Positions 15,579-20,163 of a stretch of DNA of 64,000 nt are shown piece after piece; position 1 is the stretch's first letter, and the number at the start of each line of letters is the position of its first letter. The stretch lies in IMG/VR virus record IMGVR_UViG_3300036770_007547, positions 62,001 through 126,000 of that record; one strand, written 5' to 3'. The position numbers and the translations under genes are program-made. The notes beneath the pieces were generated by a model. It saw nothing but the letters and a program-made list of their open reading frames with translations. It made no database searches and was not told the origin of the DNA.

Positions 15579-16556
15579 TCATTTAGCCGCGATGCGTGGC
15601 TTGGCCCGAAATTCATCCACAGTGGCCAGATAACTACCACACTCACAGCGACCTTTGTAGCTGTAAGAGATATAGTCACCGAGATCGTTGTTGAATATGG
15701 GCAACGTCCAGATATTGGTGAAAAACGAGCGACCATCACGATAAGTCATGTGCGTGAAATCTTCGTTGAAATGCTGGTGTCCGTGGCGGCAGGTCCACAT
15801 GATCTGCCCGATTTCACTGCTGCCATATATGTCATAGATATCGTCCACGCCAAACGCATCCATGAGTCGTTGTTTGTCGGTGATATGACCACCGGTGCTG
15901 ATGATGGCACGGGGTTGTCTTGTAAAGTATTTGCGTGGTTCCATGTCGGCCAATCGATGCAGTTTGCTGGGCGTGCTCATGAACACTGTGACACCGTGAT
16001 CGCGTATGCGCTCTAGTTTGCGTTTCAAACTGGAACTGCGCTCGATGATGACTCGGGCACCGATCACCAGTTGTGCTGCTTCCTCCATGACACGGAATCC
16101 GGCTTGCATGGTTCCCAGGGCCGTGGTCAAAAACACATCATCGTGATCCATGCCCAAGGCCAGCATACCACGTGCTGTGCAGGCCAGGGTTTTCCACCAA
16201 TCGTCTTGGCGATAAGGGAACAATTTGACCGGACCAGTGCTGCCGCTAGAGGTCACTAGATATTCACCAGACTCTAACACTCCGTATGGAGGATCCGACA
16301 ATTGATTGTTGAGCCAGCGATCGGTGGTGGTTTCGGGAACCACACCCAGGTGTTCTGGACTCGTGACCGTGTGATCTCCAAACCAGAAATCACGAGTCAC
16401 CGAGTCCAACTTGTCCAGCGTGTGCATCCAGTTTTGGTCGCGTCGTTGCAACACATGTTCTCGACTCACTAGATGCGCTTGTGAGTCCAACAAAAGTCTC
16501 TGTCGTACCAGCCTGGATAGATCAGAGTATGCGATGTTCGAGGCTGGTTCGATCAT
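15579..16556 (-). CDS. Phenylacetate-CoA ligase (PaaK/CapK)-like adenylate-forming enzyme, apparently lacking the C-terminal lid domain
   Basis: TSSGSTGP P-loop, STPS, YDIYGSSEIG, GRCECGS. Start set at MIEP (16556), which has a GGAGG SD. Confidence 0.75.
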   Translation of the reverse strand: MIEPASNIAYSDLSRLVRQRLLLDSQAHLVSREHVLQRRDQNWMHTLDKLDSVTRDFWFGDHTVTSPEHLGVVPETTTDRWLNNQLSDPPYGVLESGEYLVTSSGSTGPVKLFPYRQDDWWKTLACTARGMLALGMDHDDVFLTTALGTMQAGFRVMEEAAQLVIGARVIIERSSSLKRKLERIRDHGVTVFMSTPSKLHRLADMEPRKYFTRQPRAIISTGGHITDKQRLMDAFGVDDIYDIYGSSEIGQIMWTCRHGHQHFNEDFTHMTYRDGRSFFTNIWTLPIFNNDLGDYISYSYKGRCECGSYLATVDEFRAKPRIAAK

Positions 16557-17163
16557 CGATCCTCCGTCGGCCATTGTAGGTACCAGACTCTGAGAGGCTG
16601 TCATATATGGTAGATCCTGATAAGATATTGGTGTAATTGGGTATGATGGTCGTTCCAGTGCGATTCATGATGGAACTGCGCAAACCTATCACTGTGCCTT
16701 GACCGATGCGCGTGTTATTTAAGAAACAATAGGCGCTGACATGGCAAAAGTTTTCCAAAGTCACATAGTGACCAAACTGTATGAATGATGACAGTATCAC
16801 ATGATCCCCGATGTCGATCACTCCACACAATAGATCCACCCAGGAACTCACCAACGTACCACGACCAATTTTCACATCGGGATTGATGGTGTGACTGGTG
16901 TCATGTATGAGACTGAACCAATCCACTCCCTGCGAATCTAGATATTCCACTGCGCTGATCTTGAGAGCGATGTCGCTTCCAAGCATGATGTATTGATATT
17001 GGCTCAGCCAATCTTTGTTTTGTTGCTGTAGTTGTTCCACAGTGTATGAAACGCACGGCCTTGTGGTAGACAACAGTTTCATCATGTGTCTACTCAGCAA
17101 AGCCGTGCCAACAAAGCACAATGGCTTCCCGGTATCATATAGAACCGTGATACCGGGTGTCAT
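16522..17163 (-). CDS. PglD/NeuD-like hexapeptide-repeat (left-handed beta-helix) acyltransferase
   Basis: SLIHD..., VKIGRGTLV, IGDHVIL, GHYVTL, IGQGTVIG. Confidence 0.8.
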   Translation of the reverse strand: MTPGITVLYDTGKPLCFVGTALLSRHMMKLLSTTRPCVSYTVEQLQQQNKDWLSQYQYIMLGSDIALKISAVEYLDSQGVDWFSLIHDTSHTINPDVKIGRGTLVSSWVDLLCGVIDIGDHVILSSFIQFGHYVTLENFCHVSAYCFLNNTRIGQGTVIGLRSSIMNRTGTTIIPNYTNILSGSTIYDSLSESGTYNGRRRIDDRTSLEHRIL

Positions 17164-17164
17164 G

Positions 17165-18154
17165 TCAGCCTTTGTTTTGTCTTGCTCGGATCATGGCCAG
17201 GATGTCCTCGGCTTTGGCATTGGAGGCCTTGGCCGGTTCCGACACCACAGGTGCTGTGGCCACCGGTGTGTCTTCGTCCTCGTCAAACGAGCTAGACACT
17301 GGGGCTGCCTTGGCTGGTGCTTGATGCACATCACCATGTCCATCCACCGAGGGCTTGGACGACGGAGCCGACATTCCAGCCGGACGGAAATACTGTCCCC
17401 AGCGTTCCATGTCAAAGGGCTGGCCGTCCACCGAAGCTTCGAACATCTCTTTCATGACCTTGAGCTCTACATCAGTGGGCTTCTTGGGCAAGAACTCGTT
17501 GAGATCAAACAAGCCGTATTTCTCAAGGGCTGCTTGCTCGTCTTCGGTGAGAGCGCTTTCTTTGCGGGCCCACTTGGATGTGGAATAGTCTGCGTAACCA
17601 CCTTTTGATGTCTTGGTGATACGGAAATCCAGACCACGCAAGAGATCGGTGGGCAGTTCTTCCAACTCGGGATCCATCAGTGCGGATTTGATTGTTTGGA
17701 AGATCTGGGGACCGATGATGAATCTGCGGATGGGATTTTCCGGAGTCTTGTCATCGCTGAGCGGATTTTCGCGAACAAAGCCCTGGAAAATGTAGCTACG
17801 CTTCTTCCAGTATTTGCGACCCATGTCTTCGAGGCTCTTGTCTTTGAACCAAGTGCGCACTTCGGCCAGGATCGGGCAGCTTTCGCCCCACATTTCCACA
17901 CAAGGTACTTGTACTTGTACCTGCTTGGAGTCCATTTCGCTTTTGACGCCGTTGAACGGCAGCTTGATCATGGCTCGCTCGACCCAGAAAAATGTGTTCT
18001 TTGAGTTGCCATCGGGCAGGAACCGAACCACTGCGCTTGCGCCTTCGTCGATGTTCCAATGGGGATAGATTGCATTGTCGCCGCCGGTGCTTTGACCGCC
18101 TTTGCCTGACTCTGCGGCTGCGAGTCGTGCGCGGATTTCTGCTAGAGATGCCAT
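17165..18154 (-). CDS. gp32: T4 gp32-like single-stranded DNA-binding protein
   Basis: MASLAEIRARL, VRFLPDGN, CVEMWGESCPI, YWKKRSY, GYADYSTSKW, acidic tail. Start at 18154 with AAGGA SD. Confidence 0.92.
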   Translation of the reverse strand: MASLAEIRARLAAAESGKGGQSTGGDNAIYPHWNIDEGASAVVRFLPDGNSKNTFFWVERAMIKLPFNGVKSEMDSKQVQVQVPCVEMWGESCPILAEVRTWFKDKSLEDMGRKYWKKRSYIFQGFVRENPLSDDKTPENPIRRFIIGPQIFQTIKSALMDPELEELPTDLLRGLDFRITKTSKGGYADYSTSKWARKESALTEDEQAALEKYGLFDLNEFLPKKPTDVELKVMKEMFEASVDGQPFDMERWGQYFRPAGMSAPSSKPSVDGHGDVHQAPAKAAPVSSSFDEDEDTPVATAPVVSEPAKASNAKAEDILAMIRARQNKG

Positions 18155-18170
18155 AATAGAAGTTTCCTTT

Positions 18171-18214
18171 CGTTTGCCTAAGTTTAGCCTAGTATGTGCC
18201 TTCAAACGCATACT
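18171..18214 (-). promoter_or_regulatory. Candidate pseudoknot in the gene 32 leader (translational operator)
   Basis: mRNA AGUAUG pairs with CAUACU and, interleaved, CGUUUG pairs with CAAACG just before the SD. Confidence 0.5.
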
Positions 18215-18220
18215 GCACTG

Positions 18221-18250
18221 AGTATAGCGTGCTTTTATTTAGTCCGTCAA
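18221..18250 (-). promoter_or_regulatory. Sigma70-type promoter for gene 32 with an embedded late core TAAATA (18236-18241)
   Basis: TTGACG-18 nt-TATACT; TAAATA lies inside the spacer. Confidence 0.75.
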
Positions 18251-18263
18251 GCACTTTCGTTGA

Positions 18264-18290
18264 AATTTGGGCGACCTGGCCGCCCAAATT
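18264..18290 (-). terminator. Stem-loop after the MFS gene (probable terminator)
   Basis: Perfect 10-bp inverted repeat aatttgggcg/cgcccaaatt with a 7-nt loop; weak U tract. Confidence 0.6.
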
Positions 18291-18297
18291 CCCGGTA

Positions 18298-19557
18298 TCA
18301 TGTGCTAGACACAGTGTTTGATCGCGGTATCAAAAAGAAAGTGGACACAAATGCTATGATGCTCAACACCGTGAACACCCAGCCCAACACCGTGATGTCA
18401 TTGTTGTAGCTGGACAATATTTCGGTGTTCATGAGTGGCACCAGCCCTCCGCCCACCATGCCGCCCAGATTCATGCTGACACCGCTGGCAAACTGGCGTA
18501 TGCGAGTGGGATAGATTTCTGTGAGCAGAGCCGAAGCCGGTGCCCAGGACCCACCACCGATCAGTATGGCTCCCAGCAAAAATGGGCCCAGTACCCAGCC
18601 CTCGGCTACCCAACCAAAGATTGGTACACTGAGGAAAATCCCGGCCAGGGTCACGATCTGATACACACGTAGACTGCCCAAGGGGCTGGGACCCAAGCGA
18701 TCGGCCAACCAACCAGCAAACAGCACAAACGCCAGATACACGAAAGTTAGATAAAACCATGTGTCCATGATGGCAGCACGGCTGGCGCCCAGATGTTGTA
18801 CCATCCAGGCCACAGAAAAGAAGATGATGCCGTGATAAAACGCTGCGCCCAATTGATAGACACCAATGGCCACCAGCACTCGTTTCCAATGCTGTGCCAA
18901 CAGTTCGCGCATGCCCGGACCTTCTTCTTTCTGTGCCTGCTGGAAAGCCGGAGTTTCCAGCACCTTGAGCCTAGCATACACACCTATGGCCAAGAGAACC
19001 ACGCTGAAAAGGAACGGGATACGCCATCCACCATCCAGCAAAAAGTTGTCACCGAAACTGGTGAGTGCGGCAAACACCGCGGTGCCCATGATAGTGGCCA
19101 AGGGCAGCCCCGAGGCCAACAATCCGCTGAACAGCCCGCGCCGTTGGCTGTCGAGATTGTATTCGATCATGATGGTGCTGGTGGCAGCCCATTCGCCGCC
19201 CAGTGCCATGGTCTGTATGATCCGCAACACAAACAATCCAACCGCAGCCCACACACCGATCTGTTCAAACGTGGGCATCAGTCCCACCAATGTAGTGGTG
19301 ATACCGGTCATGATCAAGGTCAGCACCAGAGTGGGTTTTCTACCCAGTCGATCACCTAGGTAGCCAAACACTGCGCTGCCCACGGGCCTCGCAAAAAATC
19401 CCACCCCATACACCAATGCAGCGATCCAAAATCCCAGGTCAGGGAAAAATAGATTTTTGAACACCAATGCAGTGGCGATACCAAATATAACAAAATCATA
19501 CCATACTATGGTTGCGCCCAAGACGCAACTCAGCATGGCGTGTTTCCTAACATCCAT
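18298..19557 (-). CDS. MFS transporter, metabolite:H+ symporter (MHS, ShiA/ProP-like) family
   Basis: WYDF..FG, FFARPVG..VFGYLGDRLGRK, LRIIQ..ALGGEW, WRIPFL, EIYPTRIR. Confidence 0.92.
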   Translation of the reverse strand: MDVRKHAMLSCVLGATIVWYDFVIFGIATALVFKNLFFPDLGFWIAALVYGVGFFARPVGSAVFGYLGDRLGRKPTLVLTLIMTGITTTLVGLMPTFEQIGVWAAVGLFVLRIIQTMALGGEWAATSTIMIEYNLDSQRRGLFSGLLASGLPLATIMGTAVFAALTSFGDNFLLDGGWRIPFLFSVVLLAIGVYARLKVLETPAFQQAQKEEGPGMRELLAQHWKRVLVAIGVYQLGAAFYHGIIFFSVAWMVQHLGASRAAIMDTWFYLTFVYLAFVLFAGWLADRLGPSPLGSLRVYQIVTLAGIFLSVPIFGWVAEGWVLGPFLLGAILIGGGSWAPASALLTEIYPTRIRQFASGVSMNLGGMVGGGLVPLMNTEILSSYNNDITVLGWVFTVLSIIAFVSTFFLIPRSNTVSST

Positions 19558-19566
19558 GAGCTTCTC

Positions 19567-20163
19567 CTAGATTTGTGTTGCTCCGGGCACTGCCCGATTT
19601 CCATAATAAGTGCCGGGACTGACCACATCTTTGTGAACCAGGCTGCCCATCATGAATTTGACATCATCGGTCACGTTCACGTAACTCGATATCGTGGACG
19701 AATAGCCCACGAATACATTATGGCCGATGCTGCTGCGGCCTCCCACGGTGACATTGGGACTGAAATACACGTTCCTACCAGTGTGTGTCTCATGCGTGAT
19801 GCTGGAATGCGTGCTGATCACATTGAACTCGCCCAAACGCACACGGAAACACACATAGACTTGACCATAGATCCAAGTACCGCGCTGTAAATTTTCCGGC
19901 TCTTCCACCCAGGCTGCTGGATGGACATAAATGGGCCAGTTCACCCGATCGATGTCATTGGATTCCAAGAACCGTTTTCGTCGATCAATGTTTCCGAACG
20001 CCAACACACAACTTCCGCCCTGGGGCACACGATGCAGTTCGTCATATTCGATGTGATGTACTGCGGTGACTGTGGATTCACGCTCTAATAGGAAACTGTA
20101 TTCTTGTGCCAGTATTCCCGAGCCTACCACCCAAAACTCGCCCAATTCATGTTGATACAACAT
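19567..20163 (-). CDS. PglD/NeuD-like hexapeptide-repeat acyltransferase
   Basis: N-terminal VVGSGILA, YVHPAAWV, ITHET, IGHNVFVG, PGTYYGN. Confidence 0.82.
   Translation of the reverse strand: MLYQHELGEFWVVGSGILAQEYSFLLERESTVTAVHHIEYDELHRVPQGGSCVLAFGNIDRRKRFLESNDIDRVNWPIYVHPAAWVEEPENLQRGTWIYGQVYVCFRVRLGEFNVISTHSSITHETHTGRNVYFSPNVTVGGRSSIGHNVFVGYSSTISSYVNVTDDVKFMMGSLVHKDVVSPGTYYGNRAVPGATQI

What the first reader, a model, noticed from the sequence alone, without database searches (positions are those of the whole stretch)
18155..18250. Candidate pseudoknot operator in the gene 32 leader, under a dual early/late promoter
Seen: the mRNA reads AGUAUG-CGUUUG-AAGGCA-CAUACU-(14 nt)-CAAACG-AAAGGA...AUG, giving two interleaved 6-bp helices. 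Helix 1 begins at 18214, where the TTGACG/TATACT promoter should initiate, and helix 2 abuts the SD. Established: T4 gp32 represses its own translation by nucleating on a leader pseudoknot. Inference: an analogous autoregulatory structure with different loop geometry, which would also influence the downstream acylation cassette.
Basis: partly seen in the sequence, partly recalled or inferred. Interest (0 to 1): 0.6.

Follow-up and report, generated by a model that had tools for sequence, protein, structure and literature searches.

The report
Repeat-bearing gene 32 leader, no pseudoknot
The two interleaved helices exist in this jumbo-phage SSB (gene 32) leader, but relatives keep only one of them; what more than 160 related phages do conserve is a double promoter, a hairpin that holds the promoter's -10 box, and two to four AGGCA repeats running into the ribosome site, which is probably a gene-specific control region.

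Summary
The sequence facts hold. On the minus strand, AGUAUG (18214-18209) pairs with CAUACU (18196-18191), and CGUUUG (18208-18203) pairs with CAAACG (18176-18171). They lie downstream of TTGACG-N18-TATACT and upstream of a gp32-family SSB gene (18154-17165).

The pseudoknot is not supported:
- Such interleaved 6+6 bp pairs occur in 1% of 63-nt windows of this genome.
- Across 70 related leaders they occur at the chance rate.
- Helix 2 is paired in only 18-52% of aligned relatives.
- Its two arms are pieces of two other, separately conserved elements.

Four things are conserved across about 167 distinct leaders of an uncultivated jumbo-phage clade:
1. A sigma-70-type promoter with a T4-late-type (C/A)TAAATA in its spacer.
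2. A 9-13 bp covarying hairpin whose 5' arm contains the -10 box (window 18230-18206).
3. An alternative hairpin that reuses its 3' arm.
4. Two to four AGGCA(AC) repeats, found only in the transcribed leader. The last lies at or next to the SD.

In the window the repeats have an exact 11-nt period. No other non-coding site has such a cluster in this genome or in about 920 kb of five related contigs. I read this as a gene-32-specific post-transcriptional operator built on the T4 plan (a 5' structure, repeats, then the RBS). Binding by the SSB is inferred, not shown.

The parts
18264..18290 (-). 10-bp palindromic hairpin (AAUUUGGGCG / CGCCCAAAUU, 7-nt loop) just after the MFS transporter stop. 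It is a likely terminator or insulator ahead of the gene 32 promoter.
   Evidence: Read. The simple terminator scan did not flag it because the U run lies inside the stem.
18245..18250 (-). -35 hexamer TTGACG of the sigma-70-type promoter
   Evidence: 10 of 12 with TATACT, spacer 18. TTGAC-N16-19-TAnnnT is present in most related leaders.
18236..18242 (-). CTAAATA, a T4-late-type promoter element inside the sigma-70 spacer
   Evidence: Conserved as (C/A)TAAATA in related leaders. In this genome 47 of 77 TAAATA copies lie in sense within 100 nt upstream of ORF starts, the top A/T hexamer.
18221..18226 (-). -10 hexamer TATACT, embedded in the 5' arm of hairpin A:B
18206..18230 (-). Hairpin A:B. 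The 5' arm is ACGCUAUACU (18230-18221), the loop is 18220-18215, and the 3' arm is AGUAUGCGU (18214-18206). It has 9 bp with one bulge, at -6.6 kcal/mol. It can form only in transcripts that start upstream of the sigma-70 start.
   Evidence: RNAalifold finds it unprompted. On 30 sequences 94.4% of cells are paired, 22 cells show compensatory change, and the covariation score of 0.385 exceeds all 500 shuffles. It is 9-13 bp in 38 of 45 leaders. Energy.
18191..18214 (-). The loop carries AGGCA copy 1. It is mutually exclusive with A:B.
   Evidence: 94% paired in 9 sequences with AU/GC/GU exchange at one pair. 80% paired in 30 sequences. Mean best stem is 6.79 vs 5.39 bp in shuffles, and 10 of 34 leaders reach p<=0.05. 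Energy is -3.4 kcal/mol and pair probability is 0.75 in the sigma-70 transcript.
18203..18208 (-). It is really the tail of the A:B 3' arm plus a short U run.
   Evidence: The pairing is not conserved.
18171..18176 (-). It is really the end of AGGCA copy 3 plus conserved pre-SD bases.
   Evidence: Relatives read AGGCAAC-GAAAGG here and have no complementary partner.
18197..18201 (-). AGGCA repeat, copy 1
18186..18190 (-). AGGCU repeat, copy 2, directly abutting the 3' arm of helix 1 and 11 nt after copy 1
18175..18179 (-). AGGCA repeat, copy 3, 11 nt after copy 2
18164..18168 (-). Shine-Dalgarno AGGAA, 11 nt after copy 3 and in register with the repeats. In other subclades the SD is itself an AGGCA copy or is fused to one.
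17165..18154 (-). Gene 32-type SSB (329 aa). The conserved start is AUG 18154. The ORF-finder start at 18211 is an in-frame leader AUG.
16522..17163 (-). LbH (hexapeptide) acyltransferase gene. Its AUG lies 1 nt after the gene 32 UGA, so it shares the gene 32 transcript.

Best explanation
Shown:
- The window is part of a 223-kb uncultivated jumbo-phage contig related to PA5oct, Atu_ph07 and the Rak2-like phages.
- Its gp32-type SSB gene has a leader architecture shared by about 167 distinct relatives.
- A sigma-70-type promoter carries a T4-late-type TAAATA box in its spacer.
- A 9-13 bp covarying hairpin (A:B) has the -10 box in its 5' arm. Its 3' arm begins at the predicted sigma-70 start.
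- Two to four AGGCA(AC) repeats lie only in the transcribed leader and end at or next to the SD.
- The repeat cluster is unique to gene 32.

Inferred:
- The leader is a gene-specific post-transcriptional operator on the T4 gene 32 plan: a 5' structure, then short repeats, then the RBS.
- Excess SSB, or another dedicated factor, binds the repeat array cooperatively and blocks the SD.
- Late or read-through transcripts begin with A:B, and sigma-70 transcripts begin with B:C. Each mRNA therefore starts with a stem-loop, which may stabilise it and may change how repeat copy 1 is displayed.
- Because the acyltransferase gene abuts the gene 32 stop, it shares this control at least at the level of transcription.

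The confidence given is for the whole reading, including the inferred operator function. For the shown parts alone (no conserved pseudoknot; conserved promoter, hairpin and repeat architecture) I would put it at about 0.85. For the SSB itself being the binding factor, about 0.4.
For: - Repeats: AGGCA occurs at 2.62 per 100 nt in 72 leaders, against 0.16 elsewhere on the same strand and 0.07 on the opposite strand.
- 96 of 103 distinct leaders have 2 or more copies and 77 have 3 or more. The consensus is A-(U/C)-AGGCA-A-C, with A at +4 in 94%.
- A second subclade has 2 or more copies in 64 of 64 leaders.
- Density is 3.28 per 100 nt downstream of the predicted start and 0.23 upstream.
- All other clusters are in coding sequence, and the triple cluster is the only non-coding one in this genome.
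- A:B covaries. It starts 4-6 nt after TAAATA in 29 of 45 leaders, and its 3' arm starts 5-7 nt after the -10 box in 39 of 45.
- Helix 1 is kept.
- TAAATA behaves as a promoter motif.
- The T4 operator is a pseudoknot followed by UUAAA repeats and the RBS, and RB49 keeps the repeats without a knot (PMC535899).
- T4 gene 32 mRNA is the most stable T4 message, and T4 genes e and I-TevI have promoters placed inside the 5' strand of a hairpin (PMC3014915).
Against: - There are no RNA data for this phage, so both transcript starts are predicted from consensus spacing only.
- Nothing here shows that the SSB binds the leader. T4 gp32 is not known to read a G/C-containing motif.
- Repeat positions are only slightly more unpaired than the rest of the leader in folding predictions (0.58 vs 0.52). 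In the window itself they are less unpaired (0.44 vs 0.54).
- Helix 1 support is modest, and its three segments are all pieces of one palindrome, so part of the covariation may come from A:B.
- Cultured relatives (PA5oct, Phosso, Atu_ph07, XaC1, 121Q) lack AGGCA repeats.
Confidence: 0.5

Rival explanations
1. One reading: an H-type pseudoknot (helix 1 plus helix 2) nucleates SSB binding, as in T4.
For: Both 6-bp helices are present and perfect. Helix 1 starts at the predicted sigma-70 start and helix 2 abuts the SD. T4 uses a pseudoknot (PMC535899).
Against: - Helix 2 is paired in 18-50% of cells and 22-52%, close to the slid controls.
- Best loop-to-downstream pairing is 3.82 bp against 3.86 bp in shuffles.
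- The closest leader (L172) has the same helix 1 and no helix 2.
- Knots occur at the chance rate in 70 relatives.
- 1% of windows in this genome show such pairs.
- The zero-length loop 1 and the 6-nt inter-stem linker are sterically poor and rule out coaxial stacking.
Confidence: 0.06
2. The AGGCA repeats are sites for a different sequence-specific RNA-binding factor (a phage- or host-encoded protein or small RNA), not for the SSB. This factor would control gene 32 translation or mRNA decay.
For: A strongly conserved G/C-containing core (AGGC invariant by definition, A at +4 in 94%) looks more like specific recognition than like the AU-rich, low-specificity T4 gp32 target. The repeats lie only in the transcript.
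Against: The cluster occurs at gene 32 only, in this genome and in about 920 kb of five related contigs. A general regulator such as RegA or CsrA would be expected to have several targets. The CsrA-type core GGA is not met, since the core here is GGC.
Confidence: 0.22
3. The repeats act on DNA, as direct-repeat operator sites for a transcription factor that blocks or activates the gene 32 promoters.
For: They are direct repeats at 9-17 bp spacing close to a promoter, with an exact 11-bp period (about one helical turn) in the window.
Against: The copies lie almost only downstream of the start (3.28 vs 0.23 per 100 nt). They are always in the sense orientation (0.07 per 100 nt on the opposite strand). 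The last copy merges with the SD in several subclades. Spacing varies from 9 to 34 nt between relatives.
Confidence: 0.1
4. The repeats are SD-like (AGG) standby or enhancer sites that recruit 30S subunits, with no repressor involved. The hairpins only stabilise the mRNA or terminate upstream transcription.
For: Every copy contains AGG. In some subclades the last copy is the SD itself. In other subclades A:B is followed by a U run, like an intrinsic terminator.
Against: The C at +3 and the A at +4 are not complementary to the anti-SD yet are as conserved as AGG. In the window A:B is followed only by UUUG.
Confidence: 0.1

Closest known systems
T4/T2/RB69 gene 32 autogenous translational operator (McPheeters 1988; Shamoo 1993; Borjac-Natour 2004, PMC535899)
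   Same: It is the leader of a gp32-family SSB gene. A structured element sits at the 5' end, followed by an array of short repeats that runs into the RBS, all within about 65 nt of the AUG. The element is specific to the gene. Gene 32 is served by more than one promoter class.
   Different: The 5' element is a simple hairpin (two alternative ones), not a conserved pseudoknot. The repeats are AGGCA(AC) rather than UUAAA/UAAA. There is no sequence similarity and no Rfam match. SSB binding has not been tested.
RB49 gene 32 leader (repeats without a pseudoknot; cited in PMC535899)
   Same: The repeats are kept and no pseudoknot is apparent.
   Different: The repeat sequence differs (UUAA/UUAAA), and so does the phage lineage.
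Promoter-dependent alternative 5' structures of T4 genes e and I-TevI (PMC3014915)
   Same: A promoter lies inside the DNA that encodes the 5' strand of an RNA hairpin, so transcripts from that promoter lack the 5' arm while longer transcripts fold it.
   Different: In T4 the embedded promoter is the late one and the hairpin hides the RBS. Here the embedded -10 box is sigma-70-type, the late-type box lies just upstream of the hairpin, and the hairpin lies about 40 nt from the SD.
5'-terminal stem-loop mRNA stabilisers (E. coli ompA type; my own knowledge, not checked here)
   Same: Both predicted transcripts begin at or within about 1 nt of the base of a stem-loop.
   Different: The starts are predicted, not mapped, and no decay data exist.
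CsrA/RsmA-regulated leaders (several GGA sites, the last over the SD)
   Same: Several short G-rich sites in a leader, the last at the SD, one of them displayed in a hairpin loop.
   Different: The core is GGC, not GGA, and the element occurs at a single gene rather than across a regulon.

Membership tests
T4-type gene 32 translational operator | A 5' RNA pseudoknot of about 28 nt that nucleates gp32 binding | tested here: not met
   Helix 2 is not conserved. Knots occur at the chance rate in 70 relatives. The loop geometry is unfavourable.
T4-type gene 32 translational operator | An adjacent, weakly structured stretch with several short sequence repeats that includes the RBS | tested here: inconclusive
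   A repeat array running into the SD is present and strongly conserved. The repeats are AGGCA rather than UUAAA, and predicted single-strandedness is only slightly raised (0.58 vs 0.52).
T4-type gene 32 translational operator | Lies in the leader of a gp32-family SSB gene | tested here: met
   Pfam gp32, PHROG 1192, and tblastn hits to annotated phage SSBs.
T4-type gene 32 translational operator | The SSB binds its own leader and represses its own translation | not testable with these tools
   This needs a binding or reporter assay. No RNA runs exist for this phage.
Promoter-embedded alternative hairpin (T4 e / I-TevI type) | A promoter lies within the 5' strand of the hairpin | tested here: met
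   The -10 TATACT lies in the A arm. The 3' arm starts 5-7 nt after the -10 box in 39 of 45 leaders. The hairpin covaries.
Promoter-embedded alternative hairpin (T4 e / I-TevI type) | The hairpin sequesters the RBS in the longer transcripts | tested here: not met
   A:B spans 18230-18206 and the SD is at 18168-18164.
Intrinsic (rho-independent) terminator | A G+C-rich stem followed by a U run | tested here: not met
   In the window A:B is followed only by UUUG and the scan does not list it. The feature is met in other subclades of relatives.
CsrA/RsmA target leader | A GGA core in each site | tested here: not met
   The core is GGC in all 279 instances by definition of the search, with A at +4 in 94%.
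Rfam families | A match to any curated covariance model | tested here: not met
   Only snoRNA noise at E>4 in 17000-19700.

The most novel reading that the evidence does not exclude
A large uncultivated jumbo-phage clade regulates its gp32-type SSB through a previously undescribed operator. This is an array of sequence-specific AGGCA(AC) repeats read by the SSB itself. The display of the first repeat would be switched by which promoter fires: sigma-70 transcripts fold B:C, while late or read-through transcripts fold A:B. This would show that SSB autoregulation reaches far beyond the T-even phages, using a G/C-containing recognition motif and a promoter-dependent RNA switch.
Probability: 0.3. 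Interest if true: 0.7.

Novelty: new variant of a known kind. Interest (0 to 1): 0.45.

Why it matters
Autogenous control of gene 32 is a textbook case, but it is known in detail only for T-even phages. How gp32 tells its own mRNA from other RNA is still open (PMC535899).

A second, unrelated leader design is conserved in more than 160 environmental jumbo-phage variants. It has a hairpin plus a specific repeat in place of a pseudoknot plus UUAAA. This gives a natural comparison set and a short, testable motif.

It also shows that the eye-catching pseudoknot is a by-product of two other conserved elements. That is a useful caution for scans that work from sequence alone.

In this phage the same leader also heads an acyltransferase / acyl-adenylate enzyme / transporter cassette. 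Whatever controls gene 32 therefore also sets the expression of that cargo.

Tried and rejected
- Rfam scan of 17000-19700 at E<=10: only snoRNA noise.
- Nearest DNA relatives among cultured phages: only two weak coding matches. Their SSB leaders lack AGGCA repeats.
- AGGCA as a genome-wide promoter or regulon motif: rejected. TAGGCA is not enriched genome-wide (29 and 42 copies per strand). The other clusters are coding, in a RecA P-loop and in fibre-like repeats. No other leader in this genome has 3 copies.
- A leader peptide from the in-frame AUG at 18211: rejected. The 11-nt repeat period breaks the reading frame, spacing varies in relatives, and the N-terminus MASLAEIR with its SD is conserved.
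- A:B as a protein operator (LexA-like CTGT..ACAG): rejected. The loop varies from 3 to 8 nt or more, and the outer stem shows GC/AU exchanges.
- Expression data: no RNA run holds the stretch.
- Predicted single-strandedness of the repeats: only a weak trend.
- Not used, because they were not needed or do not apply to protein-RNA questions: the search for homologous proteins, the search of protein representatives, structure prediction and complex prediction.
- One paper search failed on a two-letter term.
- I did not check whether the genome encodes a gp55-like late sigma factor.

Full report
**What is there**

The window is bases 62001-126000 of a 222,775-bp IMG/VR virus contig, estimated 64% complete. 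The gene downstream of the finding lies on the minus strand at 18154-17165. It encodes a 329-aa gp32-type single-strand DNA-binding protein: Pfam gp32 at its cut-off and PHROG 1192 at E 4e-67. Its nearest cultured relatives are the SSBs of Pseudomonas phage PA5oct (53% identity), Sinorhizobium phage Phosso, Agrobacterium phage Atu_ph07 and the Rak2/121Q group.

On the minus strand the order is:
- TTGACG at 18250-18245
- an 18-nt spacer
- TATACT at 18226-18221
- AGUAUG at 18214-18209
- CGUUUG at 18208-18203
- AAGGCA
- CAUACU at 18196-18191
- 14 nt
- CAAACG at 18176-18171
- an AAAGGAA Shine-Dalgarno
- AUG at 18154

The promoter is the best sigma-70-like match in the neighbourhood.

**Is the pseudoknot more than chance?**

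Two interleaved perfect 6-bp helices appear in 0.5% of dinucleotide shuffles of the 63-nt leader. They also appear in 75 of 7072 (1.06%) 63-nt windows of this genome, so about twenty are expected in any 64-kb window.

Each helix alone is weak, at -3.4 and -3.6 kcal/mol. The leader does not fold better than its shuffles (z = +1.19).

The geometry is also poor. No nucleotide separates the two 5' arms, and six separate the stem 2 5' arm from the stem 1 3' arm. The T2/T4 knot has two coaxially stacked stems (PMC3014915).

**Comparison with relatives**

IMG/VR holds more than 600 relatives of the SSB. I took 80 loci at 67-87% identity. I added 33 distinct leaders, found with a promoter pattern that does not constrain the downstream sequence, and 64 distinct leaders from a more distant subclade.
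- In 70 distinct leaders, interleaved helices occur at the chance rate: 4 observed against 4.2 expected for 6 bp, and 35 against 32.3 for 5 bp.
- On two alignments, helix 2 is paired in 18-50% of cells and 22-52%, no better than slid controls.
- The best pairing between the helix 1 loop and the downstream leader is 3.82 bp, against 3.86 bp in shuffles.
- The most similar leader (L172) has the identical helix 1 and no helix 2.

Helix 1 is kept. It is 94% paired in 9 sequences with AU/GC/GU exchange at one position and 80% paired in 30 sequences. The mean best stem is 6.79 bp against 5.39 bp in shuffles, and 10 of 34 leaders reach p<=0.05.

**What the two arms of helix 2 really are**

RNAalifold, given 30 leaders with no structure, returns a different hairpin. 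I call it A:B.
- Its 5' arm contains the -10 box (window 18230-18221).
- Its 3' arm is AGUAUGCGU (18214-18206).
- A:B is paired in 94.4% of cells, has 22 cells with compensatory change, and has a covariation score above all 500 shuffles.
- It is 9-13 bp long in 38 of 45 leaders.
- In other subclades it is G+C-rich and followed by a U run.

The 3' arm of helix 2 is the end of a conserved AGGCA repeat plus conserved pre-SD bases. Helix 2 is therefore an accidental complementarity between two elements that are each conserved for other reasons.

**The promoters**

TTGAC-N16-19-TAnnnT is present in most relatives. PA5oct is reported to use host RNA polymerase with TTGAC / TATAATA promoters (PMC7318152).

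The spacer carries (C/A)TAAATA in the window and in many relatives. In this genome TAAATA is the top A/T-only hexamer upstream of genes. Of its 77 copies, 47 lie in sense within 100 nt of ORF starts and 15 lie antisense. It usually appears as ATAAATA 20-25 nt before the AUG, matching the T4 late promoter TATAAATA (PMC3014915).

A:B begins 4-6 nt after TAAATA in 29 of 45 leaders. Its 3' arm begins 5-7 nt after the -10 box in 39 of 45. A late-type transcript would therefore start at the base of A:B, and a sigma-70 transcript at the base of helix 1. These starts are inferred from spacing rules. No RNA data exist for this phage.

**The repeats**

The most striking conserved feature was not in the finding.
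- AGGCA occurs at 2.62 per 100 nt in the last 100 nt of 72 leaders, against 0.16 elsewhere on the same strand and 0.07 on the other strand.
- 96 of 103 distinct leaders have two or more AGGC copies, and 77 have three or more.
- The consensus is A-(U/C)-AGGCA-A-C.
- All 64 leaders of the second subclade have two or more copies, often with the SD written AGGAGGCA.
- The copies lie downstream of the predicted start: 3.28 against 0.23 per 100 nt.
- In the window they are AGGCA 18201-18197, AGGCU 18190-18186 and AGGCA 18179-18175. With the SD AGGAA at 18168-18164 they form an exact 11-nt period.
- The first copy sits in the loop of helix 1, and the second abuts its 3' arm.
- No other non-coding site carries such a cluster within 3 kb of gene 32 in 72 loci, in five related contigs totalling about 920 kb, or in this genome.
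- Cultured relatives lack AGGCA but carry their own short repeats in the SSB leader, for example TAGCACAAT in Atu_ph07.

**Interpretation**

The T4 operator is a 5' structured element followed by more than 40 nt carrying UUAAA/UAAA repeats and the RBS. Both parts are needed for repression, the repeats are thought to give specificity, and RB49 keeps the repeats without a knot (PMC535899).

The leader here has the same plan with different parts: a hairpin, a G/C-containing repeat array, and the SD in register with the array. Because the array is unique to gene 32, a gene-specific regulator fits better than a global one. The SSB itself is the simplest candidate, but this is an inference.

The A:B / B:C alternation recalls T4 genes e and I-TevI, where a promoter lies inside the 5' strand of a hairpin (PMC3014915). 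Here, however, the hairpin does not cover the RBS. Both predicted transcripts start with a stem-loop, which may add stability, as is known for gene 32 mRNA in T4. Rival readings are a different RNA-binding factor, DNA operators, or SD-like standby sites; they are listed with their tests.

**Context**

In cultured relatives gene 32 lies between a structural gene and recA/uvsX. Here it is flanked by two look-alike cassettes on the same strand:
- Upstream: AMP-binding enzyme, LbH acyltransferase and MFS transporter.
- Downstream: LbH acyltransferase, AMP-binding enzyme and sodium:solute symporter. This cassette is followed, after two unknown genes, by UvsX.

The downstream acyltransferase AUG lies 1 nt after the gene 32 UGA.

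**Verdict**

Helix 1 and the dual promoter are supported and helix 2 is not. The region holds a conserved, apparently undescribed gene 32 leader design that deserves a binding and reporter test.

Noticed in passing
window 21568-18298 and 17163-14181 (minus strand): Gene 32 is flanked by two look-alike cargo cassettes. Upstream: AMP-binding enzyme, LbH acyltransferase and MFS transporter. Downstream: LbH acyltransferase, AMP-binding enzyme and Na:solute symporter. In cultured relatives the SSB lies directly between a structural gene and RecA/UvsX.
   Followed up: partly
window, TAAATA 5' base: 932(+), 42033(+), 61229, 54791, 54741, 45251, 41985, 38490, 23024, 21624, 18241, 16721 (minus strand unless marked): (A)TAAATA is the most enriched, sense-oriented A/T hexamer upstream of genes. 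Of 77 copies, 47 lie within 100 nt upstream of ORF starts, mostly 20-25 nt before the AUG. It looks like a T4-type late promoter. I did not check whether the genome encodes a gp55-like late sigma factor.
   Followed up: partly
G000:C1 about 58997 (minus strand), outside the window: A second promoter has the same dual layout, TTGAC-N-TAAATA-N-TATACT, about 20 nt before an AUG.
   Followed up: no
L095 (Atu_ph07) 1229-1431; L097 (121Q) 1238-1440; L096 (XaC1) 1241-1443: SSB leaders of cultured jumbo phages carry their own lineage-specific short repeats: TAGCACAAT twice plus TTACACAAC in Atu_ph07, TGAAG three times in 121Q, and AAGAAACT twice in XaC1. Repeats in gene 32 leaders may be general, with the repeat sequence changing between lineages.
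   Followed up: no
window 18290-18264 (minus strand): A perfect 10-bp palindromic hairpin lies just after the MFS transporter stop and before the gene 32 promoter. Its short A and U runs are inside the stem, so it could act as a terminator in both directions.
   Followed up: no
L002, L012, L004 and similar (about 40-70 nt before the AUG); L010, L064 group: Other subclades have an extra conserved hairpin between repeat copies 1 and 2: AUCUAA..UUAGAU directly abutting AGGCAAC, or AUUUAAG..CUUAAAU. A stem directly followed by an AGGCA copy recurs across subclades.
   Followed up: partly
window 18211-18155 (minus strand): An in-frame AUG at 18211 leads the ORF finder to call a 348-aa product. The conserved SD, the conserved N-terminus and the relatives all place the real start at 18154.
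   Followed up: yes
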